Source: Macrostomum lignano
Taxonomy: Eukaryota
Length of the DNA: 64,000 nt
Direction of reading: 5' to 3'
NCBI GenBank assembly: GCA_002269645.1
Contig: NIVC01002151.1
Location: forward strand, 136,085 to 200,084
Below, piece by piece: positions 11,135 through 58,503 of this stretch; the stretch's first letter is position 1; the number at the start of each line of letters is the position of its first letter. A model generated the notes under the pieces. It did no database searches. It had not been told where the DNA came from and worked only from the letters and a program-made list of their open reading frames with translations. The position numbers and the translations under genes were made by a program.

Positions 11135-13460
11135 ATGGTAGTAATCCACATTAAGAAAGGCGATCAGAGCCAGTTCCTATTTGAAACCACAGTGGCCCAG
11201 CCTGTGGACGAGTTCATTGCTCAAGCTGTCCAGGTGTACAATGGTCGACTAAAAATTGGTCGAATTTGCGACGAAATTAGCGAGTTGGAGAAGCACGGCT
11301 TGACTTTGCCGCCGAACATGCAGGGCCTCACAGATGAGCAGGTGACCGAATTGAAACTGCGCGACGAATGGGGCGAAAAGTGCACACCCAGCGGGGGGTT
11401 CGTTGAGAGCCGCGATCCCATTGGGCGACGGAACGGCCGGGCTCCAACTGAGAATATTGTTCAGGTGAGAACCTGGGGTGGAGCTGCTTGCTCAGGCTAC
11501 AGGCCGCAAATCTTATATATCAATTGTAAAGTTTCCACAGCTTGTGAACCTTCTGGGGACATTGTTAATTGACTGCCAGTGACATTTGACTGCCAGTGAC
11601 ATTTGACTGCCAGTGACATTTGACTGCCAGTGACATTTGACTCCCAGTGACACTTGACTGCCAGTGACACTTGACTTTCAGTGACATTTGACTGCCAGTG
11701 ACAATTGACTACTAGTGGCATTTGATGACTGCCAGTGACATTTGACTGCCAGTGACACTTGACTTTCAGTGACATTTGACTGCCAGTGACATTTGACTGC
11801 CAGTGACATTTTGACTGCCTGTGACATTTGACTGCCAGTGACATTTTGACTGCCTGTGACAATTGACTTTCAGTAACATTTGACTGCCAGTGACATTTTG
11901 ACTGCCTGTGACAATTGACTTTCAGTAACATTTGACTGTCAGTGACAATTGACTACTAGTGGCATTTGATGACTGCCAGTGACATTTGACTGCCAGTGAA
12001 ATTTGACTCCCAGTGACACTTGACTGCCAGTGACACTTGACTTTCAGTGACATTTGACTGTCAGTGACATTTTACTGTGAAAGTTTCAATTTTTATGTTT
12101 GAAAAAGAGATCAACTTGATTGTAAAACCATTACGAAAACAAACCCGCAGGTGCTGTCCAAAACTCGCAAAGAGGCGCGGCAGATGATCAGCAAAGATCT
12201 GGTTGCTGCTGGCCAGGCTGTCAACATGGCCAGCATCCAGGAGGCCTTGCAAATCCTCAGCGGCGCCATGACCATCGCCTACCCAATGGGACTGCCGCCG
12301 CACGAGCCAATCAGAATGGAGCTGCAGAACGAGGAGGATCTCTCTGGGACGCAGGTATGTACTCGTAGCTGCGTTTTGGAGAGACAGGGCAAGTCTCATT
12401 GAGATATGGATTCGTCTCATTGAGATATGGACTAGTCTTATTGAGATATCGACTAGTCTCATTGAGATATGGGCAAGTCTCATTGAGATATGGACTAGTC
12501 TCATTGAGATATGGACAAGTGTCATTGAGAAATTGGCAAGTCTCATTGAGACATGGACTAGTCTCATTGAGATATGAACTAGTCTTATTGAGATATGGAC
12601 TAGTCTAATTGAGATATGGACTTGTCTCATTGAGATATTGACTAGTCTCATTGAGATATGGACAAGTGTCATTGAGATATGGACAAGTCTCATTGAGACA
12701 TGGACTATTCTCATTGTGATATGAACTAGTCTTATTGAGATATGGACTAGTCTCATTGAGATATGAACTAGTCTCATTGAGATATGAACTAGTCTCATTG
12801 AGATATGAACTAGTCTAATTGAGATATGGACTAGTCTAATTGAGATAGGGACTAGTCTCATTGAGATATGGATTAGTCTCATTGAGATATGGGTAAATCT
12901 CATAGAGATTGGTTTAATGGGGCTCATATCTCGAAGAGAAATAGCGCAAGTCTCATAGAGAGACTAAATCTCATAGAGATTTATGTATTACACCTCATAT
13001 CAGTTGAGGCAAGTCTCATAGAAATTTGGGAAAAGTTTCAAGCATCAAAAATATTTTATCAAATCTCATAGAATACAGGACATGTTTTTACCCGTCATTC
13101 CATCATGCCGCGCCATCGCAGGCGAGTCTGGAGGTGATCCCACCCGGCGACGCCTCCGCGTGGTTCTCCGGCAAGGAGATGCAGGCTGGCAAACTGCTTA
13201 GCGACTATCTTGGCCGCAACGAGAAGTGCAAAGCCATCGTCAAGTTGGCTAAGCGTGGCCAGGGTCCGCCGGCCCGCGAGCCGGTCGTCTCCGAGCAGGA
13301 GCAGAAAGAGATGATGGCATTCTATTATCGCAAACAGCAGGAAGCTAAAAAGCTGGAGGAGAGTCGAGACGATTCCTACATGGACAGCGAGTGGGCGGAC
13401 AGCCAGCAGCTTAGGCGGGCTTTTCACGGGCTGTCCGACATCAAATGGGGACCAAAGTGA
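11135..13460 (+). CDS. CFAP298: Cilia- and flagella-associated protein 298 (C21orf59/Kurly), 290 aa; exons 11135-11464, 12151-12354, 13122-13460
   Basis: Motifs LPPNMQGLTDEQ, DPIGRRNGRAP, YPMGLPPHEPIRME, GQGPPAREP, FHGLSDIKWGPK match the family; GT-AG phase-0 introns give a continuous 290-aa frame. Confidence 0.95.
11570..12075. repeat. 17-bp minisatellite (GACTGCCAGTGACATTT)n in CFAP298 intron 1
   Basis: Direct reading. Confidence 0.95.
12392..12890. repeat. 21-bp minisatellite (GTCTCATTGAGATATGGACTA)n in CFAP298 intron 2
   Basis: Direct reading; 7-aa periodic ORF on the minus strand. Confidence 0.95.
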
Positions 13461-14896: not shown

Positions 14897-15870
14897 GGGC
14901 CGTATGAATAAAACGTGAGAAAATCTTTAAAGATTATCTTTCGAGCCAAGAATTTCTTTAAAGAAATTCTTTTCCGGCAAGAAAATCTGTTGGAGAAAAT
15001 CTTACGAGTCAAGATATTCTAGAAAAGACATGAATAAAAGTTTCTCGGCTCGTGAGATTTTCTCGGCGACTGCCACTTGGCTGAAAGTTGTCTAGGGCCC
15101 AAACCAAGATGTCGGTGACGTGGAATCGACGGCCGTCTCCTCAGGCTTGGGCGCAGCCCATGCTGTGTCTATGGCTAAAACCACGTGAACACCGAAAATC
15201 CGTCCAGAAAAATCCTACTAGAAAGTGGCAAAATCCATGTGGAGTTTACCTGAACATCAGGTGACAGGAAAGTCACTTTGCTTTGAAATTTTACCCTGAG
15301 ATTGAGCGTCCTGGCATCGAATGGTTGCCAATTTTTTACATGTATATCGTGATTACACCGGATTGAAAGCCAGGGTTGCTCAGGTACCGCAGCGTGATCT
15401 CCATCTTCTGTTTCGGTGTCAGCGCACCGCCCCTTGTCTCGGAAGTATGTCCTAGGAAGCGCGTTGTCAGAAAGGTCACGTGATCCTCAGTGAATCGATG
15501 AAGCTGTCTATATGTCTCCACTGGAGTGGCCTGTCGGGGCAGGTACTCCTTGGTCTTTCTGATCTGAAGGAACATCTCGTGTCTCGTGTATGGGCGCTGA
15601 AGATTCGCTTGAGCCAGAGAAAGAGTTGCTCGCATAAAACTCAAGTGTCGGCTCTCTCGGCGAGAAAATCACGTCTTTTATTCATCAGAAAGCAAGAAAA
15701 TCTTTTCCTCGTGAGATTTTCTTGCCGAGCAAATCTTTTCTTGTGAAAGCTCGAGATTTTCTTGGCGAGAAAATCTTGCAAGAAACTCGCAGTTTTTTAT
15801 TCTTATAAACGCAAGAAATTCTTGGATTTCTTGCAAGAAAAAAATTTCTTTTTTTTTATTCATACGGCCC
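14897..15870 (-). mobile_element. PIF/Harbinger deletion derivative
   Basis: TIR GGGCCGTATGAATAAAA, 3-bp TSD AAT; minus-strand ORF 15336-15644 with HARBI1-like N-terminal motif (HRFTEDHVTFL..RGGALTPKQKMEITLRYLSNPGFQ). Confidence 0.85.
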
Positions 15871-18800
15871 AATGTATTGAACACCAAACTAAGCAGGGAT
15901 ATACAGCCATGTTTTCCCTACTCCATAGGGTAAAGAATACGTCCCTAGACATCACACTCATTCGCAGACTATTTGACGCGCTTGTTACCCCCGTTATCAC
16001 TTACGGTTGTGAGCTCTGGGGCCCTCTGGCTACCATGTCTGATACAAAAGCTATTGATAATATTCAGCTGAAATTCTACAAATATCTCCTCAATCTACCA
16101 AAATTTGCTAGCAACAGTGTGATATCATCAGAACTTGAGCTTACTCCAATCTCTCAACGAATCGCTAAAACCTACCTCATCTACTGGCTGAAGATTAGAC
16201 ACAAAAAACTCTGCCAAACGACTCCAGAAATTTTCTACTCAAACACCAGCCAAAAAAATCCATGGAAAACAAATGTACTAAAGAAACTGGAAAGTATAGA
16301 CTTAAAAGCACTAACTGAAGATAAACTTTCCCAAAGCTTTAATAACGAGAAATACCTAGTGAAAAAGCACCTCAAGATACACAGAGAAAGAGAACTTAGC
16401 CAAAAGCTAGAGAATCAGCAACATATTAAACTCTACAAAAACGCCTATCTCTACAAAAAAATCTGCAGGCCCGACCTTTCAGATTACTTTCCATGCACTT
16501 TTAGAAACAAAAAATTCCTAACAACCCTCCTAAAACTGAAATGCGAAATTACACCCAACATTTTCTCTCATGAAACATGTAGACTGTGTTGAGCGAGAAA
16601 TGGTTCCGATATCCTACATTACTTGACCGAATGTCCACAAACTGAAAAGATCAGAAAAAAATACTTCTGTCAGTACCTCTTAAATGACAAGCAAGTACAC
16701 AAGTTAGGATATGCTACAAATGAAAAAAGAGTCAGAAAAGAGCTCACTGGTGTAGCTAAAATATATGAAGTCATGAATAGCTAAAACAGTTATGCAAACT
16801 GAAACAGACATATCAGCAGTGTAATAAATCCGCTTTTCTTTTGTTTATTCATTTACTGTCTTTTTAATTTCCTATTTAATTAGCATTTAATTAGTATTTA
16901 ATTAGTTTCCTATCTAATACCTATTTAAATCGTCGCTATTCGTTTTAACGTTAAAGTTCTTTCGAAGTTCGTTTTTGTTCATTTTTCGTTCGTTTTTCAC
17001 GCTTTGAAATATTGCGCGCTTGCAAAATACTACATCTTTTTACAAAAAACGCTCTTTCAAATACCTTACAAATACCTTACAAATATCGTAACTCGCATCG
17101 TAACTCGTGTAAAAAATTTAACCTTTTGAACAAATTTAACCTTTTGAACTTAATCGTAATTAAACAACTAATGCTAAAATAACTTAAATACACAGAAATA
17201 TACTGGCCAAACAGGCTTCTTGCCTGAGCCAACTTACTACTACTACTACTACTATCTGACATCATCGACGTATAATTTGGTATATCATAAATGATCGAAC
17301 TCGTATACGGGTTATGTATAAATGGCTGCTGATTGTGTTCAATCAATTTGGGGGGGGCGCAAACTTCTTAATCTAGGCCCTATCAATATCATGGATTGCC
17401 ATGTTACATTATCTTATCCGATGCCCATCGAATATAGCCTGGCTATTCCAATTTAATAGATTTTTTAATTTTAGCTAAGCCTAGGCGTAGGGGCCACAGC
17501 TAGGGCCAGGCCGGTAGGTCTATATCTGTAAATTTTCTATAGTAAAGCCAGATGGCTATATTTGAACACCTTAAGCATCCATAAAAAAGAAAAAGGGCTA
17601 GCTTTGCATGTTTGGCAATGGCCTACTTAACTTATTCTTTTTATAGCCCAACTAGTAATTAGTAGGCCTAGCCTATAGTTTGTTTGATAGCAAGGCATCA
17701 TCTAATTATGAATATATTGCTTTTTCTAGGCCTTATATAGCCATAGGCTATGTCCTATGACTTGTCAATGTCAATAGTTCTAACATTGCTACTGCTAGTA
17801 GTTATGGTATTGTATAGCACCTCCAGTTAGAATTAGGGAGGGAGATGTAACCAGTCATTTTGCCTTTAAACTGTTTTGGCCATGAACATTTTGCCCCCAG
17901 ACCATTTTGCCCCCAGACTGTTTTGCCTATAGACCATTTTGGCCATGGACTATTTCGCCTTTGAGTCAATTATACTAGTTTGGCTAAGGTGGCAATAAAT
18001 GCCCCAAATTTGCAAAAAATCGACAGATCCTATTCTTTTTGTATTTCTGGTATTACCAAACCCTTTCTTTTTTTCTTTTCCTCTGATTAAAATGGCTTAT
18101 GCCTTATATGCTTTTGAAAAGAAAGACTTTCTTAGAAAAAAAAAACTTGTAATAATTTATAACCACAATAGACACAAAGACACAATTTAATAATTAATTT
18201 GTATTGTAGGCCTACCAGCAATTCATATTTTATTACATATTAAAACAAAAAATTAGCATTGAAAAAGACAAAATTAAAGACATATATATATATCCAACAT
18301 CTCTAAATTATATAGTTACCATTATAGCCAAAATGCCTATAGCAAAACTATTTTATAGACAAAACAAACTATGGGCAAAATGTCTATAGCTGAAATGGTT
18401 TAGGGGCAAAATAACTGGAATTCAGATGGTTAGAAAGTTAGGCCTAGATTTGTCTTTTGGACTATAGGCCCTACTATTTTTTTACCCTAGTTAGATTGCC
18501 TATAGACTATTCATCTACTAGTGCTAGGCCTATATAGTAGATAATGATGAATAAATAAATAATACCATTCCTTGCAATGATAATTACTAGCAATACCAGG
18601 GTCTAATTATTAGGCTTAAGTTGCTTAACTTATTATTTTCTTATTAATAGATGGTCTTTTGTAAGTTTTGTTCTAAGACAATATCATTTAACACTTTATA
18701 CCATATTACCATAAATACTCCTAATCTTGTATATATGTTACTATGTTATATAGTCATTAAAATGTATAAAAAACAAAACTTTCATTTATTAGATAAAGCA

Positions 18801-19964
18801 GAAAATTCTCTAGGTTTTTTAAGTCTTTTATGAAATGAAGAAGTACTTAAAGTATATAATGATATTGTAGCACTGTAGCTAAAACTTGAACTTGGGTTGT
18901 TTTTCATCAATCAATGGTCTTTTTATACTTTTGCACATATAACATGGCTTCTAGAAACTATAGTCTTATTTTCACAAACTGTAAGAACTTTCTATTTTAT
19001 CTAATACCATTTTAATAGTTTAAAAGCTTTTAAATAAGCTAAAAATAGTTCCTTAAGTGGACAAAATAAAAAACATTGAGAAAAGAGTTTAACAAACAAG
19101 TCAAGACAAATGCCAATATATTATAGCTCATGTTATAGTATAGGCTTTTTTAGATGATAAAAAAAGAAAAAGAAAAAATATTTATTGAAATATTTATAAG
19201 CTATTATTACCTTCTATAAAAGTATAAAAAGTATTTCATTCATTTTATTTTTTAAAGAAATTTTGTCTGTTTAAATTTTCAAATTTTCAATGGCAATTCC
19301 AATTGCCATTGGATTATTAGGAAAAAAATTATATTGGAAGTTATTAGAGTCTAATAGCAATGACTTGATTTAGCCACAGGGGGCTTTGTATATCCAGATA
19401 TAGCAAGGTATTGCTAGCTATTTTGCAATATAATATTATTAAAAAATATTGGTTTTTAGTATTCTAATATCTAAAAGATATCACTGATAGTATCAAAGTA
19501 TTGGATTTGTGCCCAACCAACACTATATAATATATTTAATTCTGCAAGTTTCCTTGTACTTGCAAAAAATTTCTAAGTTTAATATGATTTATGATTAATA
19601 TTTCTAAGTTTATTATGATTTTTAAACTTCCATTTGAACTATTTATCTACTAGTGGATAAATATTCTACTACCCATTAGATGGTCACCCCCTTGCAAATT
19701 TTAGAATTAGACCAATATATTCATACACATACATGCGCAACTGCTGGCTGACCTGGCCGATCCGGCCACCGTAAATCGTGGCTGACCAGGGGTAAGTCGC
19801 AAAATTGAGTCAACCAAAAACAGAAAAACACAAGAACCAAGAAAGGCAAGAGGAAAGCGAAATAAAGAGCAGTTCAGGGAAAATGGTGAAGCAAAAGAAA
19901 AACAATTCGCAAAAGAAGCAAACTAAGTTGTAAAAATAATCAGGTACTGGTAAGTCGCAACAGG

Positions 19965-20570
19965 AATCAGGTAAGTCGCAAAAGAAGCAAACTATGTCGC
20001 AAAAAGGATCAGGTAAGTCGCAAAAGGGTTAGGTAAGTCGCAAAAGGATTAGGTAAGTCGCAAAAGGGTTAGGTAAGTCGCAAAAGGATTAGGTAAGTCG
20101 CAAAAGGATTAGGTAAGTCGCAAAAAGGATCAGGTAAGTCGCAAAAAGAATCAGGTAAGTCGCAAAAGGATCAGCAAAGTCGCAAAAGGATTAGGTAACT
20201 CGCAAAAAGGATTAGGTAAGTCGCAAAAAGGATTAAGTAAGTCGCAAAAAGGATTAGGTAAGTCGCAAAAGGGTTAGGTAAGTCGCAAAAGGATTAGGTA
20301 AGTCGCAAAAGGATTAGGTAAGTCGCAAAAAGGATTAGGTAAGTCGCAAAAGGGTTAGGTAAGTCGCAAAAAGGATTAGGTAAGTCGCAAAAGGGTTAGG
20401 TAAGTCGCAAAAGGATTAGGTAAGTCGCAAAAGGGTTAGGTAAGTCGCAAAAAGGATTAGGTAAGTCGCAAAAGGGTTAGGTAAGTCGCAAAAGGATTAG
20501 GTAAGTCGCAAAAGGATTAGGTAAGTCGCAAAAAGGATTAGGTAAGTCGCAAAAAGAAGCAACTAAGTCG
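19965..20570. repeat. ~20-bp tandem array (AGGTAAGTCGCAAAAGGATT)n, an expansion of the element's subterminal motif
   Basis: TAAGTCGCA also occurs at 19794, 21963 and 21987, and as TGCGACTTA in copy C. Confidence 0.9.
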
Positions 20571-20824
20571 CAATAAGAGGGAAGTAAGTCACAATCAGAG
20601 GCAATCAGGGGGTAGTAGGTGCAAGTGTGGCAGGAGAGCAAAAACAGAATAGAAGCCTTCAACAACAGACAAGATCTTTGAAATCAGAAGCCCGCGTCAA
20701 CAGTTTCCCATTGATTTCTTAAACTCTGGAGCAGGGGTCGGCAAACTCCGGCTCGCGAAGCCCCTCTATCTGGCCCTCGCCCCTCGGGTTCTTTGAAACT
20801 TCCTAACTACGAGTAGCAAGGTTG

Positions 20825-25099: not shown

Positions 25100-25194
25100 T
25101 TTTGGCGCCACCTGGCGTGTCTCACACCGGTTTCTGCTGGCTAACTGACTGCCTGCCATTGTGCTTCCTCACGCGATCTCGTCTCGATACCGCC

Positions 25195-27252
25195 CTTCCG
25201 TCTCTTCCGCCCCTCCTCCCGTCTCTTCCGCCCCTCCTCCCGTCTCTTCCGCCCCTCCTCCCGTCTCTTCCGCCCCTCCTCCCGTCTCTTCCGCCCTTCT
25301 CCCGTCTCTTCCGCCCGTCCTCCCGTCTCTTCCACCCCTCCTCCCGTCTCTTCCGCCCTTCTCCCGTCTCTTCCGCCCCTCCTCCCGTCTCTTCCGCCCC
25401 TCCTCCCGTCTCTTCCGCCCTTCTCCCGTCTCTTCCGCCCTTCTCCCGTCTCTTCCGCCCCTCCTCCCGTCTCTTCCGCCCCTCCTCCCGTCTCTTCCGC
25501 CCCTCCTCCCGTCTCTTCCGCCCTTCTCCCGTCTCTTCCGCCCGTCCTCCCGTCTCTTCCGCCCGTCCTCCCGTCTCTTCCACCCCTCCTCCCGTCTCTT
25601 CCGCCCCTCCTCCCGTCCCTTCCGCCCTTCTCCCGTCTCTTCCACCCCTCCTCCCGTCTCATCCGCCCCTCCTCCCGTCTCTTCCGCCCCTCCTCCCGTC
25701 TCTTCCGCCCCTCCTCCCGTCTCTTCCGCCCCTCCTCCCGTCTCTTCCGCCCCTCCTCCCGTCTCTTCCGCCCCTCTTCCCGTCTCCTCTGCCCCTTCTC
25801 CCGTCTCTTCCGCCCCTCCTCCCGTCTCTTCCGCCCCTCCTCCCGTCTCTTCCGCCCGTCCTCCCGTCTCTTCCGCCCTTCTCCCGTCTCTTCCGCCCCC
25901 TCCTCCCGTCTCTTCCGCCCGTCCTCCCGTCTCTTCCGCCCCTCCTCCCGTCTCTTCCGCCCTCCTCCCGTCTCTTCCGCCCGTCCTCCCGTCTCTTCCA
26001 CCCCTCCTCCCGTCTCTTCCACCCCTCCTCCCGTCTCTTCCACCCCTCCTCCCGTCTCTTCCACCCCTCCTCCCGTCTCTTCCACCCCTCCTCCCGTCTC
26101 TTCCGCCCTTCTCCCGTCTCTTCCGCCCCTCCTCCCGTCTCTTCCGCCCTTCTCCCGTCTCTTCCGCCCTTCTCCCGTCTCTTCCGCCCTTCTCCCGTCT
26201 CTTCCGCCCTTCTCCCGTCTCTTCCGCCCGTTCTCCCGTCTCTTCCGCCCGTTCTCCCGTCTCTTCCGCCCCCTCCTCCCGTCTCTTCCGCCCCTCCTCC
26301 CGTCTCTTCCGCCCTTCTCCCGTCTCTTCCGCCCTTCTCCCGTCTCTTTCGCGCCGTTCTCCGTCTCTTCCGCCCCTCTCCCGTCTCTTTCCGCCCCTCT
26401 TCCCGCCTCTTCGCCCTCCTCCCGTCTCTTCCGCCCTTCTCCCGTCTCTTCCGTCCCTCCTCCCGTCTCTTCCGCCCCTCCTCCCGTCTCTTCCGTCCCT
26501 CCTCCCGTCTCTTCCGCCCCTCCTCCCGTCTCTTCCTCCCCTCTTCCCGTCTCTTCCGTCCCTCCTCCCGTCTCTTCCGTCCCTCCTCCCGTCTCTTCCT
26601 CCCGTCTCTTCCGCCCCTTCTCCCGTCTCTTCCGTCCCTCCTCCCGTCTCTTCTTCCCGTCTCTTCCGCCCCTCTTGCCGTCTCCTCTGCCCCTCCTCCC
26701 GTCTCTTCCGCCCTTCTCCCGTCTCTTCCGTCCCTCCTCCCGTCTCTTCCTCCCCTCTTCCCGTCTCTTCCGTCCCTCCTCCCGTCTCTTCCTCCCGTCT
26801 CTTCCGCCCGTTCTCCCGTCTCTTCCTCCCCTCTTCCCGTCTCTTCCGTCCCTCCTCCCGTCTCTTCCGCCCCTCCTCCCGTCTCTTCCGTCCCTTCTCC
26901 CGTCTCTTCCTCCCGTCTCTTCCGTCCCTCCTCCCGTCTCTTCCTCCCGTCTCTTCCGTCCCTCCTCCCGTCTCTTCCTCCCGTCTCTTCCGCCCGTTCT
27001 CCCGTCTCTTCCTCCCCTCTTCCCGTCTCTTCCGTCCCTCCTCCCGTCTCTTCCGCCCCTCCTCCCGTCTCTTCCGTCCCTCCTCCCGTCTCTTCCTCCC
27101 GTCTCTTCCGTCCCTCCTCCCGTCTCTTCCGCCCCCTCCTCCCGTCTCTTCCGCCCCTCCTCCCGTCTCTTCCGCCCCCTCCTCCCGTCTCTTCCGCCCC
27201 TCCTCCCGTCTCTTCCGCCCTTCTCCCGTCTCTTCCGCCTTCTCCCGTCTCT
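25195..27252. repeat. 21-bp C-rich minisatellite (CCGTCTCTTCCGCCCCTCCTC)n running into the gap
   Basis: Direct reading. Confidence 0.97.
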
Positions 27253-28188
27253 NNNNNNNNNNNNNNNNNNNNNNNNNNNNNNNNNNNNNNNNNNNNNNNN
27301 NNNNNNNNNNNNNNNNNNNNNNNNNNNNNNNNNNNNNNNNNNNNNNNNNNNNNNNNNNNNNNNNNNNNNNNNNNNNNNNNNNNNNNNNNNNNNNNNNNNN
27401 NNNNNNNNNNNNNNNNNNNNNNNNNNNNNNNNNNNNNNNNNNNNNNNNNNNNNNNNNNNNNNNNNNNNNNNNNNNNNNNNNNNNNNNNNNNNNNNNNNNN
27501 NNNNNNNNNNNNNNNNNNNNNNNNNNNNNNNNNNNNNNNNNNNNNNNNNNNNNNNNNNNNNNNNNNNNNNNNNNNNNNNNNNNNNNNNNNNNNNNNNNNN
27601 NNNNNNNNNNNNNNNNNNNNNNNNNNNNNNNNNNNNNNNNNNNNNNNNNNNNNNNNNNNNNNNNNNNNNNNNNNNNNNNNNNNNNNNNNNNNNNNNNNNN
27701 NNNNNNNNNNNNNNNNNNNNNNNNNNNNNNNNNNNNNNNNNNNNNNNNNNNNNNNNNNNNNNNNNNNNNNNNNNNNNNNNNNNNNNNNNNNNNNNNNNNN
27801 NNNNNNNNNNNNNNNNNNNNNNNNNNNNNNNNNNNNNNNNNNNNNNNNNNNNNNNNNNNNNNNNNNNNNNNNNNNNNNNNNNNNNNNNNNNNNNNNNNNN
27901 NNNNNNNNNNNNNNNNNNNNNNNNNNNNNNNNNNNNNNNNNNNNNNNNNNNNNNNNNNNNNNNNNNNNNNNNNNNNNNNNNNNNNNNNNNNNNNNNNNNN
28001 NNNNNNNNNNNNNNNNNNNNNNNNNNNNNNNNNNNNNNNNNNNNNNNNNNNNNNNNNNNNNNNNNNNNNNNNNNNNNNNNNNNNNNNNNNNNNNNNNNNN
28101 NNNNNNNNNNNNNNNNNNNNNNNNNNNNNNNNNNNNNNNNNNNNNNNNNNNNNNNNNNNNNNNNNNNNNNNNNNNNNNNNNNNNNNNN
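27253..28188. other. Assembly gap (N run)
   Basis: 936 N. Confidence 1.
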
Positions 28189-31676: not shown

Positions 31677-36941
<5,265 letters not shown>

Positions 36942-41880: not shown

Positions 41881-43119
41881 TCTTCCAGCAACAGTTTTAA
41901 CAAAGGCGGACCACAGTTTCAAAACCCTTTTAATAAAGCCTCAAGATAAGTCATTCAGATCAACAGACCTTTTTCAATATTGATTGCAGCACTTGTTCTG
42001 CTGTTCAAGGGAGTTGCTTGGGGATTTCTTTACCAGAAAATCATTTCACGCTGGGGCAGCGCTGTTTGTTAGAATGGAGACCAGATGGTTAAAATTGGAT
42101 AAGGAGTGAAACTATAAGAGGAGAAAAGACGAGAGCTGACCCAGAAACAGGGGGGCAAGTAACGAGGAGAATTATCCTTTGCTAAGAAACATTTGGCCAA
42201 CCCAGAAGAGAAAATGCTTGTCCCGGCTGCTTGGCCATTCATTTCGGACTGCGAACATCTCCATTCTGCCCCCTGCCCGCAAAGTCCCCCCCGGGCAGAT
42301 TGCTGCCCCCCATCCCGAGGCCCCAAGAGCTTTGATAGCTTCGAAAGCTTGGCCTCCCTAAAACACGCTGACAAGGGGGAGGCGAGAGAGAGGGAGAGAC
42401 TGCAGCAGCTGTACGAGTAATGGCTGCTGTAAGGGAGAGGCAGACCAGAGGGCGTGGTGGGGCTTCAAATGGACTGCCTGCAGCAGCAGCAGCAGCAGCA
42501 GTGAGGGGGGTAGCTTAGCATTTTTGTGCCGTGCGCCCACCAAAAGTGCAGACGGATCGCTGATTACCGATACTGCCTGGCTGCCTGACTGACTGAACGG
42601 CCCGCAGCGCCTCCTGTGCAGCTTCAGAAGCAATGGTTGAGGAAGGGACAGTGAAGAACAGCGGGCGCATTGTTCGGCTTTTTCGGTCTTCACAACTGCA
42701 CTGGACAGTCCAGAGCCCCGCTCGCGAACTGCAGCGGCCAATGGGAGAGGGGCGAAGACTAGAGGGTAGCGGAGAGGCTGCTGGGGACGATGCGGCACTA
42801 AGAGCATCGGTGGACAGAGTTGCGCTTCCTGTTGCAGTACACACCAACGGGCGGGGGATAAGATACAGCACCGGAGAGTCGGGCAATTTACGCCCAAAGT
42901 GGATTTTAGTTTCCACTGCTGCAGTGGCTGTCCATAGGCCAGCGTCTGACAGCTCGCATTCATAGCCTTCGAGCAGCGCTCTCGCGGCTTGTCAACCTCG
43001 CCAAGTGGGCCGTCTGTTCCTGCTGGTTCAGCGCTACCGACAGCGCGCACGATCGGCCCTCAGCCGTCGATGCTGAGTAGCTGGTGGCGGCAGCGGCAGA
43101 TCGGCAAAACCATTGCGCC

Positions 43120-46100
43120 ATGGCCACTGCCACCACGGCCGCTTCTGCTTCAACGAAGCTGCTCACGACTGCGGCTGCGGCAACGACGACAGCTGCGACA
43201 GCCGCGGCAGCCGCCAACGGAACTCGCTCGTCGCTGGCGGGCCCGCTGGCCTGCACCGGCCAGCGCAAGTGGTACATCTTCCTGGCCAGCAGCGGCATCG
43301 TGCTCCTTGGCGGCGTCCTGTTCGTCCTTGTCTACCGCCTGCTGTCGCACCTGGCCGGCAAGATCGGGGCCGGCAGGGCCGGCGCCGCCGGCAAGCAGCC
43401 GGAGAACAAGGAGAAAACGGATGACAGCGGAGACGAGGATGAGGCCGACGAGTCAACCGAAGAGGAAGTCGAAGTCGGCTGGCTGACGGAGGCCAAGGAC
43501 TGGGCGGGCGAGCTGATCTCCGGCCAGACCACCACAGGCCGCATCCTGGTGGTGCTGGTGTTCCTGATCAGCATCGCCTCCCTCATGGTGTACATCATCG
43601 ACACGGCCAGCATGAAGCAGACCGAGGAGTGCATCCGCTGGTCGGACAGCCTGTCCCAGCAAATCGATCTCGCCTTCAATGTCATCTTCCTGATCTACTT
43701 CTTCATCCGGTTCATCGCCGCCCAGGACAAGCTGCTGTTCTGGTTCGAGATGTACAGCCTGGTGGACATCCTGACCATACCGCCGTCGTTTGTCTCAATC
43801 TACCTGAACCGCAACTGGATCGGGCTGCGCTCGACTCGAGCTCTGCGCATCCTCAGCCTGCCGGACGTGCTGCAGTACCTGAACATTCTGAAGACCAGCA
43901 CGAGCATCCGGCTGTTCCAACTCATGACATTCTTCGCCTCCCTGGTGCTCACCGCGGCCGGCTTCGTGCACCTGATTGAGAACTCGGGCGACCCGCCGTC
44001 ATTCACCAATCCGAACATCAGCTTCAACATGACCTATCCGACCTGCATCTATTTTGTTATCGTGACAATGTCGACTGTGGGCTACGGCGACATCTATTGC
44101 ACCACGAGCACCGGCCGGCTGTTCTCCGCCCTGGTGATCATGGGCGGTCTGGCCGTGTTCGCCAACTCCATCCCGGAGATCGCAGACATTCTCAGCTCGC
44201 GCAACAAGTACGGCGGCTACTACCGCAAGGAGGCCGGCAAGCAGCACATCGTGCTGTGCGGCCACATCACCTACGAGTCCGTGGCCAACTTCCTCGGCGA
44301 CTTCCTGCACGAGGACCGCGAAGATGTTGACGTCCAGATTGTGATTCTGGACAAGCACGTGCCCGACCTGGAGCTGCAGGGCCTGTTCAAGCGTCACTTC
44401 ACCCAGGTGGAGTTCTTCCAGGGCTCCGTGATGAACTCCAAGGACCTGTCCCGGGTGGGCCTGGAGACGGCGGACGCTTGCCTGGTGCTGGCCAACAAGT
44501 ACTGCCCCGACCCGGATGCTGAGGATGCGGCCAACATCATGCGCGTGATCTCCATCAAGAACTTCTACGAGCGGATCAAGGTGATCATCCAGCTGATGCA
44601 GTACCACAACAAGACTTACCTGCTGAACATCCCCAGCTGGGACTGGAAGCAGGGCGATGATGCCGTCTGCATCGCCGAGCTGAAGCTGGGCTTCCTGGCG
44701 CAGAGCTGCCTGGCGTTCGGCTTCTCCACCCTGCTGGCCAACCTATTCACCATGCGCAGCTACAAGGACGACAAGGCCATGCCGAAGTGGCTCAACAACT
44801 ACCTGGAGGGCGCCGGCATGGAGATGTACACCGAGTACCTGTCGCCGGCGTTCGAAGGCCTGACGTTTCCCATGGCGGCTGAGCTCTGCTTCACCAGGCT
44901 GAACCTGCTGCTCATTGCTGTAGAGGCCAAGAACGACCAGGGCACGGAGAGCTGCATCGCCATCAACCCCAAGGAGAACATCCGCATCGAGCAGGGCACG
45001 CAGGGCTTCTTCATCGCCCAAGCGGCCGAGGAGGTCAAGAAGGCGTTTTTCTTCTGCAAACGCTGCCACGGCGACGTCGAAGACTCGCGTCTGATAAAGA
45101 AGTGCCGCTGCAAAACTTCTGTGGCGATAACGGCCAAGTCAAAGTCGCAATCAAAGCAAAAGCAACTGCAACAACAGCAGCAGCAAAAGCAGCAGCATCA
45201 GCAGCAGGCAGCAAATCCCAGGAGCAGAAATCACCCGGGCCAGGGCCAGAACTCGCTACCGGTTGCTACGGGCGGCTTGGGCGACGGAGGCGGCGCGAGT
45301 CCTGGCCGGCACCTGCAGCTGCCGGGATCGGCTCCGGAGCCGGGGGACATCAGCCACAGCAGCCGGCACGGCAAGCTCTCTGTGGCGCACACCAACCCGA
45401 TCTCGCTGCAGAAGCTGCACGATCAGATGGACCGCAAGTTCGACTCCACTGGAATGTTCCACTGGTGTCCAGATGTGAACTTCGAGGACGCGATTCTGGA
45501 CCGCGAGCAGGTCACGGCGACGGTGTACTCTAACCACATCGTCGTCTGCCTGTTCGCCGACGCTGGCAGCCCGTTGATCGGCCTGCGCAACTTCGTGATG
45601 CCGCTTCGGGCGAGCAACTTTCATTATCACGACCTCAAGCACGTGATCTTCGTAGGCAACGCCGACTACATGCGGCGCGAGTGGAAGACGCTGATGAATT
45701 TTCCCAAGCTGAGCATCTTCCCCGGCTCCCCGCTCAACCGGTCCAACCTGCGCGCGGTCAACATCAACCTGGCCGAGATCTGCGTGGTGCTGAGCTCGAA
45801 GCAGGCTTCGAATCTGGACGACCCGACTCTGGCCGATAAGGAGGCCATTCTGTGCTCGCTGAACATCAAGGCGATGAAGTTCGACACCGAGGCTCCACCG
45901 ACTCAGCAGGTCGCCACCACGCCACCGAGCTCCAATAACAATGTCCGAATCCTGACTGAGCTCTCCATGGACGATAACGTCCAGTTCCTCGAGCAGGACG
46001 ACGACGATGACCCCGACATCGAGCTGTACATGACGCAGCCGTTCGCCTGCGGCACCTCGTTTGCCATCAGCGTGCTCGACTCGCTCATGAGCACGGCCTA

Positions 46101-46605
46101 TTTCAACGAGAATGCGCTGACGCTAATCCGGACGCTCATCACGGGCGGAGCAACGCCTGAGCTTGAGCAGATCCTGGCCGAGGGCGCCGGCATTCGCGGC
46201 GGCTTCAGCACGCCGGAGTCGTTGGCAAACCGGGACAGATCGCGAGTCTCCCAGCTGGCGGTTGACGACGAACGACTTCGAGAATTTGTCACCGGAGCCG
46301 GGGCGGTGTACTCCGACCTGTTTCTGGGCGCTCTGCACCGGTACGGCATCCTCTGCATCGGCCTGTACCGGCTGCTCACCCCGCCGGAAGAGGGCAAGCA
46401 GACGCTCAAGAAGCGCTACATCATCACGAATCCGCCGGCCAAATTCCCGGTGCTGCTGTCGGATAGGGTGGTCTGCCTGCAGCGGTTCACCAACCAGCAC
46501 GAGGGCCGGCACAGCCACGGCAGCGGCGCAGCAAGCGGCGGCCCCGGTGGCTCCTCAATTGGCCGGCCGCCTCCGGGAGGCCTGCAGCACCAGAGATCCG
46601 CATGA
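43120..46605 (+). CDS. slo: Large-conductance Ca2+-activated K+ channel alpha subunit (Slo1/BK), 1161 aa from the first in-frame ATG, single exon
   Basis: S0 [25 protein letters not shown], pore [12 protein letters not shown]1 HIVLCGHIT, heme motif CKRCH, calcium bowl [24 protein letters not shown]; uninterrupted ORF; AATAAA near 46889. Confidence 0.97.
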
Positions 46606-48004
46606 GCCGTCGTTGCGTTGCCTGCAGTCTGTTTTGTCAACGAACCTGTGCTCTTTTACAGACGAGAACCGCATCGAATGCGCCGGAAACAAACAGAAAT
46701 TTACACGCACTGCAGCTGCAGTAACAGTTGAGCACCCTTGCCTTTCTCTACACTTTAACAGCTTCCCTTCGGATGCGCCCCAACCTTCTCACCGCCGGCG
46801 ATGCGTTCTCTTAACCCGCCATTCAATACCGACAGGTCGTCCGATTGTTTGCCATCAGGTGGGGCCATCGTGTAAAACTTATTCGCGAATAAATAATTTT
46901 TTTTACCTTCTAATGTGCCAGGTGATTTCAGTAGTGTTTTGTACTTCCTCTGGATAAAATCAGGTGACATTCTCAGAATCAGCATAGCCCATCTAACTAA
47001 CGCGTCTTTTATTTATTATTTATTAAAGGCAGGGGGGTTGTGTGCACCCTGGCGCACTTTAAGCGACATAGGCACACAACCGGCGAGAGGCATTACTGCC
47101 CATTCCGCCGACTCCCCTGAGCAGGCATACAAGCGCGCGCGGATACGTACGCAGGCACACACTCACACAGGAGTGTACAGCTGGGCTGCTCTGGGGCGCA
47201 GAAGTCAAGCAACGCTATTTGTGATTAGAACTTCTTCAAGAGCTCTTCAACGCCACTATGGGGCCTAGCCATAGTCAAGAGTCAATTGACGTCAAATCTC
47301 TTCCTTTGATTCTGAGATATCCCGAGTCATTTTAATAACTTGCTCACCTTGCTCACACACATCGACATTTGTCCCCAACATTATTATCAAGCAGTTTTGA
47401 TTTAACATAGCTTCAATTCATCATAGCAAACCTCTACCTGTTCACTAACTTCATTGGAATTAACATAGCCATCAACTTCGATCTCATTGGTTTACAATAA
47501 ATTAATTATCCTTAAGTCCAATAGACTAATCTGATAAACATCTTCTATCTGGCCTGAACCCTCCCAGGTTTTATAATGCCACCTCAGGACCTGTCATATT
47601 GTTTGAACTTTTCTTTTACCAAACCAGACAATTTGACAAGAGCACAAGAAAGAATTGTTGGTTTAATGCTTTATTTTTCTCCGCATGGCAACTCACAAGT
47701 GTCTCACCTTTAGATGTTTTTTGATGATTAACTTGCTGAAGACTTTGTTGCGGCTTCTGTCTGAAGCGTTTTGCTCTATCCCAAATTCCTGCCCAATCTG
47801 AAACCAGTTCGCTTGTGTAACATTAATTAACTTCATTGTGAATTTGTGAATTTGTGCTCTCTGTTTCACTTAACTCTGCCCACCGTTTGGACTCACACCG
47901 ACTCATCGGCAGGTGGCAAACTCTGCAAATACACGAAGTATATTACCAAAAAAATTACCGATTTTAAACTCAGTCTCTTGGATTAACTGTTACAGTAGAG
48001 TTCA

Positions 48005-55521: not shown

Positions 55522-58503
55522 TCAAGCAATAGCATTGGCATCCCAGTTAACCACCAGACCGCCATTGTTATCATTGTTATCATGCTGCTGCTGATCCCCA
55601 TCACAGGAAGAGGCCTGCAAACTAGCGGGCGGTGTGTAAGCCTCGCCCTCTGTTCGATAATACCGATTCGCTTCCCGTTCAATTCGAATCACTCTCTCGC
55701 AGTCGGCCAGGTAAGTCAGCGAGCAGGCTAGGAAGGCGCCGCCACCCAGCACGGACACGAAACAGCAGCAGTACATGGCCAGCTGCAGGGCGCTGAATTT
55801 CACAGCTACCGAGGCCGAGTTTTTGGCAATCAGATCCGACGCCAGGCCAACCAGGTAAGGCGAACCGGCGTCTCCCAGCAGGTGGCTGGCCAATATATTG
55901 ATACTAGTAGCCATTGACCGCCTGGTTGGCACCGTCACTCTCAGTGTGATCTCATTAACCAGAGCCCAGTTCAAGCACAGCAGCAACTCCGTGGCGAACA
56001 TCAGCACCAAGGTTAGGTACACGCTAACTGGCACCAGGTACAGGGTGGCCCACAGGAACGGGCCAGCCAGCAACAGGCCTGCGCCGTTCACAATGGGATC
56101 AATATTCGGCATTCGATGGCGCAGCCGCCTGGCGATCTCGCTGCCCAGCGCCACCCCGGCGATGCCAGCCACGCAGGTGACAATGCCGAAGCCCAGGGCG
56201 GCTTGGTCGGGTTTAACTGGGCCGCCGCGCAATTGCAGATCCAAGTCCAGCATCAGCGGAGTCCACCAGGTCAGGGCGCCGGCTACGAAGGCAACAGCGG
56301 TGAAGCCGAGGGTGTTGAGCATGAAGCTGCGATTGCGCAGCAGATGGCGGACATCGTCCCGCCAGGAGGTGGCGTGCATGTGCGTGGATTTCTCGGCTTG
56401 GCCGCAGGCCGGCTCCCGGAACTGGAGCAGCAGCAACAGGACGCAGACCACGCCTTGGAAAGGGTTTGGGAGATTCTGATAAGATCTACCTGAAGATTTC
56501 ATTACTCAACCTGAAGATTTCAATAATCTACCTGAAGATTTCAATAATCTACCTGCAGATCTACGTGAAGATTTCAATAATCTACCTGAAGATTTCAATA
56601 ATCTACCTGCAGATCTACGTGAAGATTTCAATAATCTACCTGAAGATTTCAATAATTTACCTGAAGATTTCAATAATCTACCTGAAGATTTCAATAATCT
56701 ACCTGCAGATCTACGTGAAGATTTCAATAATCTACCTGAAGATTTCAATAATCTACCCGAAGATTTCAATAATCTATCTGAAGATTTCATTTATCTACCT
56801 GAAGATTTCATTTATCTACCTGAAGATTTCAATAATCTACCTGAAGATTTCAATAATCTACCTGAAGATTTCAATAATCTACCTGAAGATTTCAATAATC
56901 TACCTGAAGATTTCAATAATCTACCCGAAGATTTCAATAATCTACCCGAAGATTTTAATAATCTACCTGAAGATTTCAATAATCTATCTGAAGATTTCAT
57001 TTATCTACCTGAAGATTTCATTTATCTACCTGAAGATTTCAATTATCTACCTGAAGATTTCATTTATCTACCTGAAGATTTCAATTATCTACCTGAAGAT
57101 TTCAATTATCTACCTGAAGATTTCAATAATCTACCTGAAGATCTACGTGAAGATTTTATTAATCTACCTGAAGATTTCAATTTAATCTACCTGAAGATTT
57201 CAATAATCTACCTGAAGATTTCAATAATCTACCCGAAGATTTCAATAATCTACCTGAAGATTTCAATAATCTATCTGAAGATTTCATTTATCTACCTGAA
57301 GATTTCATTTATCTACCTGAAGATTTCAATTATCTACCTGAAGATTTCATTTATCTACCTGAAGATTTCAATTATCTACCTGAAGATTTCAATTATCTAC
57401 CTGAAGATTTCAATTATCTACCTGAAGATTTCAATAATCTACCTGAAGATTTCAATAATCTACCTGAAGATTTCAATAATCTACCTGAAGATATACGTGA
57501 AGATTTTATTAATCTACCTGACGATTTCAATAATCTACCTGAAGATTTCAATTTATTCTACCTGAAGATTTCAATTTATTCTACCTGAAGATTTCAATAA
57601 TCTACCTGAAGATTTCAATAATCTACCTGAAAATTTTATTAATCTACCTGAAAGTCCAATAATCTACCTGAAGATTCGGAGATAATCTACCTGAATATAC
57701 CGAGATAATCTATCTGAGGATCCAGATACTATTACAGAGATCCAGCAGCAGGATAATAAGCCCTTTAACAACCTCAATCCTCTTGAACAGCAAAACAACA
57801 ATCCTAAAACTTGAAACTCACCAAGACCTGGCGTGACCCGTAGCGCTGATCTCCAGCTATCGGCTGCCTGAGCCACCTGGCCGCCAACCACGTAGCCCAG
57901 ACCGCTGCCCAGGGGTACCTGCAGATTGAACACAATCAATGCCACGGTGCGAGCGTCGCCCACAAACAAATCGGCCACAATAGGTGTTGACACCGTAATA
58001 TAAGAGGCTTCGCCAATGCCAACTAGGCAACGGGTTAGCAGGAACAGGCCGAACTGGTTCTTAGGCACGAACGAACTGGCCAAAGTGACCGCAGACCAGG
58101 CGAGCACACCGCCAATCATGATGGTCTTGCGGCTCCACAGACTGCCAGGACTGCCGCGATCGCCCAAGTAGCCAAATAACGGACTAAGCAGCATGTAGGA
58201 TACAATAAATGAAGTCTGCAATAATCCAGCTTCACTATTGTCTATTTTGTAATCTTTTTCGATTCGATCGAGTACTGCTGCTACGGTGAATCTGTCCATA
58301 TAGTTGAGCAAATTAATGCAGCACAGTACAGCAATTGAGATCAGAGCTTCGGATTTGCTGATTGTTGGCTGACTGCCAGATGAGTTGTCTATGGTTGAGC
58401 CATCAGCGGTGGTCACCTGCGCATCGTCCTGCAGGTCGACGTGATCAACTTCTTCATTGTCAGTGATTGAGGCAGTCTGACTAGCGTCAATGTAAGCAGA
58501 CAT
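55522..58503 (-). CDS. SPNS1: Spinster-family MFS transporter, ~537 aa; exons 58503-57822 and 56453-55522
   Basis: NLLNYMDRFTVA, AGLLQTSFI, TRCLVGIGEASY, ALRVTPGL|GVVCVLLLL..REP, LGFTAVAFVAG, SHLLGDAGSPYLVG; GTGAGT donor and AAG acceptor in phase 1. Confidence 0.93.
56483..57720. repeat. 21-bp minisatellite (CTACCTGAAGATTTCAATAAT)n filling the spinster intron
   Basis: Direct reading. Confidence 0.97.

What the first reader, a model, noticed from the sequence alone, without database searches (positions are those of the whole stretch)
43120..46605. Completely intronless Slo1/BK channel gene
Seen: a 3486-nt uninterrupted ORF with S0-S6, the TVGYGD filter, both RCK domains, the CKRCH heme motif and an intact calcium bowl. 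The three other genes in the window all have introns. Established: Slo1/KCNMA1 in vertebrates, Drosophila and C. elegans is a many-exon gene diversified by alternative splicing. Inference: a functional retrogene or wholesale intron loss that fixes one isoform, possibly with diversity supplied by paralogs instead of splicing. No poly(A) remnant or TSD is visible, which suggests an old event.
Basis: partly seen in the sequence, partly recalled or inferred. Interest (0 to 1): 0.72.

Follow-up and report, generated by a model that had tools for sequence, protein, structure and literature searches.

The report
Intronless BK channel genes in Macrostomum
The window comes from the flatworm Macrostomum lignano and carries an intact, selectively constrained BK/Slo1 potassium-channel gene with no introns in its 3.5-kb coding sequence, but every Slo1 copy and paralog I could check in this intron-poor genome is the same, so this is an old lineage trait and not a recent retrogene.

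Summary
Window 43120-46605 (+) is one 3486-nt ORF encoding a complete 1161-aa Slo1/BK channel. It is identical to a transcript-derived GenBank gene model of Macrostomum lignano.

An annelid ortholog has 21 coding introns and a mollusc ortholog has 25. Nineteen positions are shared, and the flatworm gene has none of them.

This is not a locus-specific retrogene. All three genomic copies of this gene are single-exon, and so are all three copies of a paralog about 72% identical to it. A third paralog exists, but its DNA was not obtainable. The closest outside relative, a PacBio HiFi DNA contig from a coral-reef metagenome, is also uninterrupted.

There is no poly(A) remnant, no target-site duplication above chance, and no intron-bearing parent. 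The copies evolve under strong purifying selection (24 synonymous and 3 non-synonymous differences, no indels, dN/dS 0.04).

Neighbouring genes keep only 1-2 introns, and the genome as a whole is intron-poor. The best reading is an ancient, complete, probably cDNA-mediated intron loss that predates the paralog duplications. Whether it happened in place or by retrogene replacement cannot be told here. Interest is modest.

The parts
43120..46605 (+). Single-exon CDS of Slo1/BK channel paralog A (1161 aa plus stop). Identical to a GenBank M. lignano gene model (P0171).
43264..43344 (+). S0 transmembrane segment ([27 protein letters not shown], aa 49-75). S0 is the extra helix that marks Slo1.
   Evidence: alignment to Aplysia BK; invariant C45/R49/W51
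43546..44208 (+). S1-S6 voltage-sensor and pore module (Pfam Ion_trans, aa 143-363).
43813..43881 (+). S4 with three conserved arginines (R237, R240, R243).
44074..44091 (+). K+ selectivity filter TVGYGD (aa 319-324).
44656..44922 (+). BK_channel_a segment of RCK1 (aa 513-601). RCK1 as a whole spans about aa 373-667.
45055..45069 (+). CKRCH (CXXCH) heme-binding-type motif (aa 646-650).
45121..45429 (+). Q-rich, low-complexity RCK1-RCK2 linker (aa 668-770). Older WormBase models place weak in-frame 'introns' in this region (45034 or 45076 to 45318).
45529..45936 (+). RCK2 core (Slo-like_RCK best stretch, aa 804-939).
45982..46017 (+). Calcium bowl [12 protein letters not shown] (aa 955-966).
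46114..46479 (+). Slowpoke_C (TrkA_C-like) domain (aa 999-1120).
42634..43119 (+). Upstream block, 99.2% identical and gap-free between the diverged genomic copies, while sequence further upstream is 92-93% identical with many indels. Putative 5'UTR and core promoter (inference).
46606..47181 (+). Downstream conserved block (97.7-99.7% between copies). Putative 3'UTR, with AATAAA at 46888-46893. No genomic A-tract.

Best explanation
This is a working Slo1/BK channel gene of the free-living flatworm Macrostomum lignano. It encodes a voltage- and Ca2+-gated K+ channel alpha subunit. The protein has an S0-S6 membrane part with a TVGYG pore, and a cytosolic gating ring made of RCK1 and RCK2 with the calcium bowl.

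The coding sequence lost all ancestral spliceosomal introns long ago. This happened before the duplications that produced at least three Slo1 paralogs (A, B, C). It probably also happened before the split from the unknown reef animal represented by contig L003.

The most likely mechanism (inferred) is reverse-transcriptase-mediated. Either a full-length cDNA converted the gene in place, or an ancient retrocopy replaced the parent. The lineage's genes are intron-poor in general. The recent polyploidy of M. lignano then tripled each paralog.

Shown: ORF integrity, family membership, absence of the 19 ancestral intron positions, the same state in all checkable copies and paralogs, and purifying selection.

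Inferred: the mechanism and timing of loss, transcription (from the origin of the gene model), and channel activity.
For: Identity and source:
- The ORF and its domains are intact.
- The window protein is a GenBank M. lignano protein. The window equals contig NIVC01002151.1.

Ancestral state:
- Capitella Slo1 has 21 coding introns and Elysia has 25. Nineteen positions are shared within 1 aa, and none is present here.
- JGI metagenome fragments from other animals show the same exon borders, at query residues 448/498-549/588.

The lineage norm:
- Gene A on three contigs is a 3486-nt single exon.
- Paralog B on three contigs is single-exon (L008 intact at 1081 aa). The truncated models in L001 and L011 are in single-exon loci 99.75-99.78% identical to L008; the L001 shift was traced to one extra T in a T-run.
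- In an NJ tree, A, B and C form one clade (100% bootstrap) and L003 is its sister (100%).
- L003 is an uninterrupted 1105-aa ORF in PacBio HiFi DNA. It shares a Gln at the E374-equivalent position found in none of 11 other protostomes.

Function:
- Window copy versus L002: 24 synonymous and 3 non-synonymous differences, no indel in 3486 nt, dN/dS 0.039. The flanks carry roughly one gap opening per 80-170 nt.
- A versus B: dN/dS 0.13.

Transcription:
- GenBank Mlig_3_7 gene models derive only from RNA-seq and transcript assemblies (PMC5730564).

Intron-poor background:
- Published figures are a mean exon of 721 nt and about 3-5 introns per gene (PMC10468722; PMC5730564).
- The neighbouring spinster-like gene has 1 intron in 1.6 kb of CDS. 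The CFAP298-like gene has 2 in 0.9 kb.
Against: - No RNA reads were examined here. Transcription and absence of splicing rest on where the GenBank model came from.
- At the published density of about 1.2-1.6 introns per kb of transcript, a 3.5-kb CDS with none is still in the low tail (rough Poisson 0.3-2%). Genome-wide attrition alone is therefore not a comfortable explanation. Some gene-specific event is implied, but its nature is unresolved.
- DNA of paralog C could not be obtained. Its WormBase model has two small gaps relative to B that could be introns or model artefacts.
- The organism behind L003 is unknown. The tree contained protostomes only, so long-branch attraction is not excluded.
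- No other flatworm Slo1 gene structure was retrieved. The point on the flatworm tree where the introns disappeared is not fixed.
Confidence: 0.72

Rival explanations
1. A classical, fairly recent functional retrogene: an LINE-mediated copy of a processed mRNA from an intron-bearing slo1 parent that still sits elsewhere in the genome.
For: The CDS has no introns. A non-LTR retrotransposon with endonuclease and RT domains lies about 7 kb upstream at 32044-36343 (-), so the machinery exists in this genome.
Against: No poly(A) remnant, and no TSD above the shuffle expectation. Every M. lignano Slo1 protein found falls in the A/B/C clade, and every locus with DNA is single-exon, so no parent is seen. 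A versus B dS is about 1.65, so the intronless state is old. The three A copies share long colinear flanks, meaning they arose by DNA-level duplication.
Confidence: 0.05
2. An ancient retrogene replaced the ancestral multi-exon gene ('orphan retrogene'), then duplicated into A, B and C. This is the retroposition version of the best explanation.
For: At least 19 introns are absent at once, in a genome that still keeps about 3-5 introns per gene. No parent is left. No homology was found between the A and B flanks, and neighbour genes are not shared within the 6-8.7 kb of B-locus flank examined.
Against: No hallmark survives. The same pattern follows from in-place conversion by a cDNA, or from serial losses. 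Neighbouring genes have also lost most introns without being retrogenes.
Confidence: 0.25
3. Assembly artefact or cDNA contamination: the intronless sequence is a transcript assembled into the genome.
For: None beyond the absence of introns.
Against: The gene sits inside three independent contigs of 90-436 kb. Their flanks are colinear, repeat-rich and diverged, while the CDS is conserved. Paralog B shows the same picture on three further contigs.
Confidence: 0.01
4. A processed pseudogene or decaying copy that merely retains an open frame.
For: Two annotated B copies are truncated by frameshifts.
Against: 24 synonymous to 3 non-synonymous changes and no indels in gene A. All functional motifs are intact. 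The B frameshift examined is +1 T in a T7 run of a PacBio CLR assembly, and copy L008 is intact.
Confidence: 0.02
5. The ORF is not truly intron-free. An in-frame 'exitron' in the RCK1-RCK2 linker is spliced in some transcripts, as two WormBase models suggest. That would give isoform diversity at the classical Slo1 splice hotspot.
For: Models P0002 and P0003 join ...AQAAEE or ...CKRCHGD to [10 protein letters not shown] through GT...AG boundaries with a shared acceptor at 45318/45319.
Against: The donors are weak (GTCAAG, GTCGAA, against GTGAGA and GTATGT in the CFAP298-like gene). The acceptor has no pyrimidine tract. Both models delete residues conserved in all Slo1 proteins, including the CXXCH motif or the KKCRCK stretch. 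The RNA-seq-derived GenBank model is unspliced.
Confidence: 0.07

Closest known systems
Slo1 / KCNMA1 / slowpoke / SLO-1 BK channel alpha subunits (solved: Aplysia 5tj6, Drosophila 7pxe, human 6v22 and others)
   Same: Full colinear architecture: S0-S6, TVGYGD, RCK1, RCK2, calcium bowl and the CXXCH motif. Identity to other protostome orthologs is 64-67% on 922 ungapped columns. PDB matches have E=0.
   Different: The coding sequence has no introns, against 21 in Capitella and 25 in Elysia. There are three paralogs instead of one alternatively spliced gene. The human E374-equivalent Mg2+-site position is Gln (residue numbering from my own knowledge). The linker is Q-rich and the N-terminus is Ala/Thr-rich.
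Vertebrate Kv1 (KCNA, Shaker-type) genes with intronless coding regions (established knowledge, not tested here)
   Same: An ion-channel family whose invertebrate counterpart (Drosophila Shaker) diversifies by alternative splicing. In one lineage it exists as several single-coding-exon paralogs, so diversity comes from gene number.
   Different: It is a different channel family. No functional differentiation of the Macrostomum paralogs has been shown.
Orphan retrogenes / retrogene replacement of the parental gene, and cDNA-mediated intron loss by homologous recombination (general mechanisms, established knowledge)
   Same: Complete, simultaneous absence of many ancestral introns in a functional gene, with no intron-bearing parent in the genome.
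   Different: None of the diagnostic marks (poly(A), TSD, changed synteny) could be demonstrated. The event predates a paralog radiation, and dS is saturated.
Partly intron-reduced Slo1 genes of unidentified small animals in environmental DNA (L032, L034, L035)
   Same: Several ancestral introns in RCK1 are fused out. For example, query residues 375-666 lie in one exon in L032.
   Different: These genes still keep several short introns. Their taxa are unknown.

Membership tests
Slo1/BK channel alpha subunit | Six-TM voltage-gated-like core plus an extra N-terminal S0 helix | tested here: met
   Pfam Ion_trans covers aa 143-363. The S0 stretch aligns to Aplysia BK from residue 11.
Slo1/BK channel alpha subunit | K+ selectivity filter TVGYG | tested here: met
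   TVGYGD at aa 319-324.
Slo1/BK channel alpha subunit | Tandem RCK1 and RCK2 gating-ring domains | tested here: met
   Slo-like_RCK in two stretches (9e-72), BK_channel_a and Slowpoke_C. Colinear match to solved gating rings 3naf and 3mt5.
Slo1/BK channel alpha subunit | Calcium bowl (run of Asp in RCK2) and RCK1 Ca2+-site residues. These distinguish Slo1 from Slo2 and Slo3. | tested here: met
   [12 protein letters not shown]. The DREDVDV, FTMRS and MEMYTEY motifs are conserved. Slo3 (4hpf) and Slo2 (8hir, 5u70) score far lower than Slo1.
Slo1/BK channel alpha subunit | Large-conductance K+ current gated by voltage and Ca2+ | not testable with these tools
   Needs heterologous expression and patch clamp.
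Retrogene (processed gene copy) | Lacks the introns of its source gene | tested here: met
   0 of the 19 conserved spiralian intron positions are present.
Retrogene (processed gene copy) | Poly(A) tract remnant 3' of the copy | tested here: not met
   No A-run or A-rich 30-mer within 1.3 kb of the stop.
Retrogene (processed gene copy) | Flanking target-site duplications | tested here: not met
   The longest shared direct repeat is 10 nt, equal to the shuffle median.
Retrogene (processed gene copy) | Intron-bearing parental gene elsewhere in the genome | tested here: not met
   Only the A, B and C groups were found among M. lignano proteins, and all loci with DNA are single-exon. Caveat: the search was of proteins, not the whole assembly.
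Retrogene (processed gene copy) | New genomic position relative to ancestral synteny | not tested
   No flatworm or spiralian synteny data were retrievable with these tools.

The most novel reading that the evidence does not exclude
In the macrostomid lineage an ancient retrocopy replaced the many-exon slo1 gene. That abolished the alternative splicing that tunes BK channels in other animals. Functional diversity was then rebuilt by gene duplication: paralogs A, B and C carry E, D and Q at one Mg2+-site position, and all carry Gln at the other. This would be a BK-channel parallel to the intronless vertebrate Kv1 family.
Probability: 0.2. Interest if true: 0.5.

Novelty: new member of a known kind. 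Interest (0 to 1): 0.3.

Why it matters
Slo1 is a textbook example of a channel whose properties are tuned by extensive alternative splicing. A lineage in which the whole family is single-exon shows that this mode of regulation is dispensable. It also offers a natural test of whether paralogs can take over the role of splice isoforms.

There is a practical side too. M. lignano is a transgenic flatworm model, and intronless 3.2-3.5-kb BK genes can be cloned directly from genomic DNA for electrophysiology or for anthelmintic-target work.

The result also cautions that, in this genome, absence of introns is not evidence of retroposition.

Tried and rejected
- A third protein search with the species-specific linker (window 44920-45520), meant to fish out transcript fragments, returned nothing, not even the parent protein. 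Direct RNA evidence was therefore not obtained.
- Paralog C (P0004, P0175) exists only as UniRef/WormBase models. No DNA could be fetched for it.
- P0010 (Logan contigs L004-L006) ranked just after the M. lignano proteins and L003, but it is a cephalopod transcript and so irrelevant.
- A scan of JGI metagenome contigs with the A/B/C/L003 alignment found 228 Slo1-encoding stretches. None was closer to Macrostomum or to L003 than the named species. L026 is an arthropod-like transcript.
- I tried to identify the L003 organism. Its flanks carry no other gene, and the source paper does not give the coral host of the HiFi samples in its main text.
- A literature search for 'slowpoke' plus 'intronless' gave 0 papers. 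'Macrostomum' plus 'intron loss' gave nothing relevant, and papers on flatworm SLO-1 say nothing about gene structure.
- Rfam found nothing in the window.
- Pfam did not confirm the third neighbouring gene as Brix/RPF1.
- I tested whether the paralogs diverge in the regions that are mutually exclusive exons in insects and nematodes. They do not; identity there is 0.83-0.90.
Full report
**What is there.** Window 43120-46605 (+) is a single open reading frame of 3486 nt, or 1161 aa. Pfam finds Ion_trans, BK_channel_a, two Slo-like_RCK stretches and Slowpoke_C. A search of solved structures gives E=0 matches to Aplysia BK, Drosophila Slowpoke and human KCNMA1. The alignment is colinear in two blocks separated only by the poorly conserved RCK1-RCK2 linker. 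Slo3 and Slo2 score far lower. In a 15-sequence alignment the filter TVGYGD, three S4 arginines, the RCK1 Ca2+-site motifs, the CXXCH motif (CKRCH) and the calcium bowl are all intact.

**Where it comes from.** The protein matches at 100% identity 'hypothetical protein BOX15_Mlig033072g1' of Macrostomum lignano, which UniProt calls 'BK channel'. The cluster look-up shows that the window's own product is P0171, found on two contigs. The window matches contig NIVC01002151.1 exactly, in the CDS and in 1 kb of flank on each side. The GenBank gene models of this assembly come only from genome-guided RNA-seq and transcript assembly (StringTie, TACO, TBONE, TransDecoder; PMC5730564). The existence of an unspliced model is therefore indirect evidence of an unspliced transcript. 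I could not inspect reads.

**How unusual the structure is relative to other animals.** I chained exact exon matches of the annotated proteins onto their own loci. Capitella teleta Slo1 has 22 coding exons over 21 kb. Elysia chlorotica Slo1 has 26 over 64 kb. Nineteen intron positions coincide within 1 aa, so they were present in the lophotrochozoan ancestor. None exists in the flatworm gene. Slo1 fragments from other animals in JGI metagenomes show the same exon borders, and a few unidentified small animals have partly fused exons.

**Is it a locus-specific retrogene? No.**
- Gene A exists on three contigs, each as the same 3486-nt single exon.
- Paralog B is about 72% identical overall and 78% identical on conserved columns. 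It exists on three further contigs. L008 carries an intact 1081-aa single exon.
- The truncated B models in L001 and L011 sit in single-exon loci that are 99.75-99.78% identical to L008, with 2 and 5 gap openings.
- The L001 frameshift is one extra T in a T-run, the typical error of a PacBio CLR assembly.
- A third paralog, C, is known only as protein models.
- In a neighbour-joining tree on 922 ungapped columns, A, B and C form one clade (100% bootstrap). Its sister, also at 100%, is P0005/L003.
- L003 is a 6.4-kb Logan contig of run ERR14224704. The source paper identifies that run as PacBio HiFi sequencing of DNA from a Tara Pacific coral sample. Its 1105-aa Slo1 ORF is uninterrupted in genomic DNA.
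- L003 shares with A, B and C a Gln at the position of human E374, which is Glu in all 11 other protostomes in the alignment. That argues the grouping is real. However, the organism is unknown and the tree had no non-protostome outgroup.
- No M. lignano Slo1 outside the A/B/C clade appeared in two protein searches.
- The flanks share no direct repeat longer than chance allows, and there is no A-tract. The only candidate signal is AATAAA at 46888.

The broader idea of old, wholesale intron loss stands.

**Is it functional? Yes, as far as sequence can show.**
- The window copy and the L002 copy differ at 27 of 3486 positions. Of these, 24 are synonymous and 3 are not, and there is no indel. Nei-Gojobori dN/dS is 0.039.
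- The flanks of the same two copies are 92-97% identical with frequent indels.
- Two flank blocks are better conserved: a 486-nt block just upstream of the ATG (99.2%, no gap) and about 576 nt downstream. I read these as UTRs and core promoter.
- A versus B gives dN 0.21 and dS about 1.65 (near saturation), for a ratio of 0.13.

**Background.**
- Published annotations give M. lignano about 3-5 introns per gene and a mean exon of 721 nt. That is roughly a fifth of the intron density of the Capitella and Elysia slo1 genes.
- In the window, the spinster-like MFS gene (545 aa) has a single intron that splits the MFS_1 profile at position 157. The CFAP298-like gene has two introns.
- From my own recollection, the human orthologs have about 11 and 6 coding introns.
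- If each ancestral intron had about a 0.2 chance of retention, the probability of losing all 19-21 independently would be about 1%. A Poisson estimate from the published density gives 0.3-2%.
- The gene is therefore in the low tail of an intron-poor genome. This is compatible with genome-wide attrition acting on thousands of genes. It is explained more economically by one cDNA-mediated event that removed all introns together.
- Whether that event was conversion in place or retroposition followed by loss of the parent cannot be decided here. No hallmark survives, A and B flanks share no homology or neighbour genes within the 6-8.7 kb of B-locus flank examined, and no synteny data were available.

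**Paralogs versus splicing.**
- A, B and C differ mostly in the N-terminus, the S0-S1 linker, the RCK1-RCK2 linker and the C-tail. These regions also vary between species.
- They are 83-90% identical in the segments that are mutually exclusive exons in insects and nematodes.
- One point hints at functional divergence. The position of human E399, a Mg2+ ligand (numbering from my own knowledge), is E in A, D in B and Q in C.
- This is suggestive only.

**Cryptic splicing.**
- Two WormBase models of gene A (P0002, P0003) remove 95 or 81 codons of the linker in frame.
- The implied donors are GTCAAG and GTCGAA. The acceptor lacks a pyrimidine tract. Both models delete residues that are conserved in all Slo1 proteins.
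- I regard them as ab initio artefacts. RNA-seq would settle it.

**Verdict.** This is a real, intact, constrained BK channel gene with an uncommon but lineage-wide gene structure. The protein is an ordinary family member and is already in public databases. I found no paper noting that it is intronless. Novelty is modest and lies in gene-structure evolution.

Noticed in passing
window 56484-57695; 11569-12077; 12392-12892: The introns of the neighbouring genes are almost entirely minisatellite arrays. These are the spinster-like intron (period 21/42, about 1.2 kb) and the two CFAP298-like introns (period 17 and period 21). On the coding (-) strand the spinster array unit reads ...TTCAG|GTAGAT..., so each unit carries both an acceptor-like and a donor-like signal.
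   Followed up: partly
window 19949-20577: A tandem array (period 20/61/81) whose unit GGTAAGTCGCAAAAGGGATTA contains a perfect 5' splice-site consensus, GGTAAGT, repeated about 30 times.
   Followed up: no
window 43120-46605 versus L008 6001-9246: Gene A has a very high GC3 of 0.85. Paralog B has 0.63 and neighbouring genes have 0.53-0.74. Possible causes are biased gene conversion or expression-linked codon bias. Not explained.
   Followed up: no
window aa 406 (nt 44335-44337) and aa 431 (nt 44410-44412): The position equivalent to the human Mg2+ ligand E374 is Gln in A, B, C and L003 only. The E399 equivalent is E, D and Q in A, B and C respectively (human numbering from my own knowledge). 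Mg2+ modulation may be altered and may differ among paralogs.
   Followed up: partly
window 32044-36343 (-) and 15762-16592 (+): A non-LTR retrotransposon with endonuclease (Exo_endo_phos_2) and reverse-transcriptase fragments, split over several ORFs, lies about 7 kb upstream of slo1. A second ORF, possibly the tail of a retroelement, has no Pfam hit.
   Followed up: partly
window 25194-27252 and about 27250-28150: A CT-rich 21-nt minisatellite of about 99 copies runs into an assembly gap of Ns. It produces the extreme GC and AT skew and the spurious 1000-aa ORFs in this region.
   Followed up: no
window 43070: An out-of-frame ATG lies 50 nt upstream of the slo1 start. It opens a 165-aa ORF (42989-43486 frame) that overlaps the start codon. 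If it lies within the 5'UTR it would act as an overlapping uORF. Alternatively the mature 5' end or trans-splice site lies downstream of it.
   Followed up: no
L001 8584-8590; L011: The GenBank models of paralog B copies g1 (872 aa) and g3 (475 aa) are truncated by frameshifts. The one examined (L001) is +1 T in a homopolymer, an assembly error and not decay. L008 (g2) is intact.
   Followed up: yes
L003 412-3729: The reef-metagenome Slo1 has Cys in place of the third S4 arginine, and TMPTVGYGD instead of TMSTVGYGD. The organism is unidentified. The sample is coral tissue DNA, whose host the main text does not give.
   Followed up: partly
L032 4120-5097; L034 3639-4163; L035 2730-3290: Environmental DNA contigs from unidentified small animals carry Slo1 genes with several ancestral RCK1 introns fused out and very short remaining introns. 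Partial intron reduction in Slo1 is therefore not confined to Macrostomum.
   Followed up: partly
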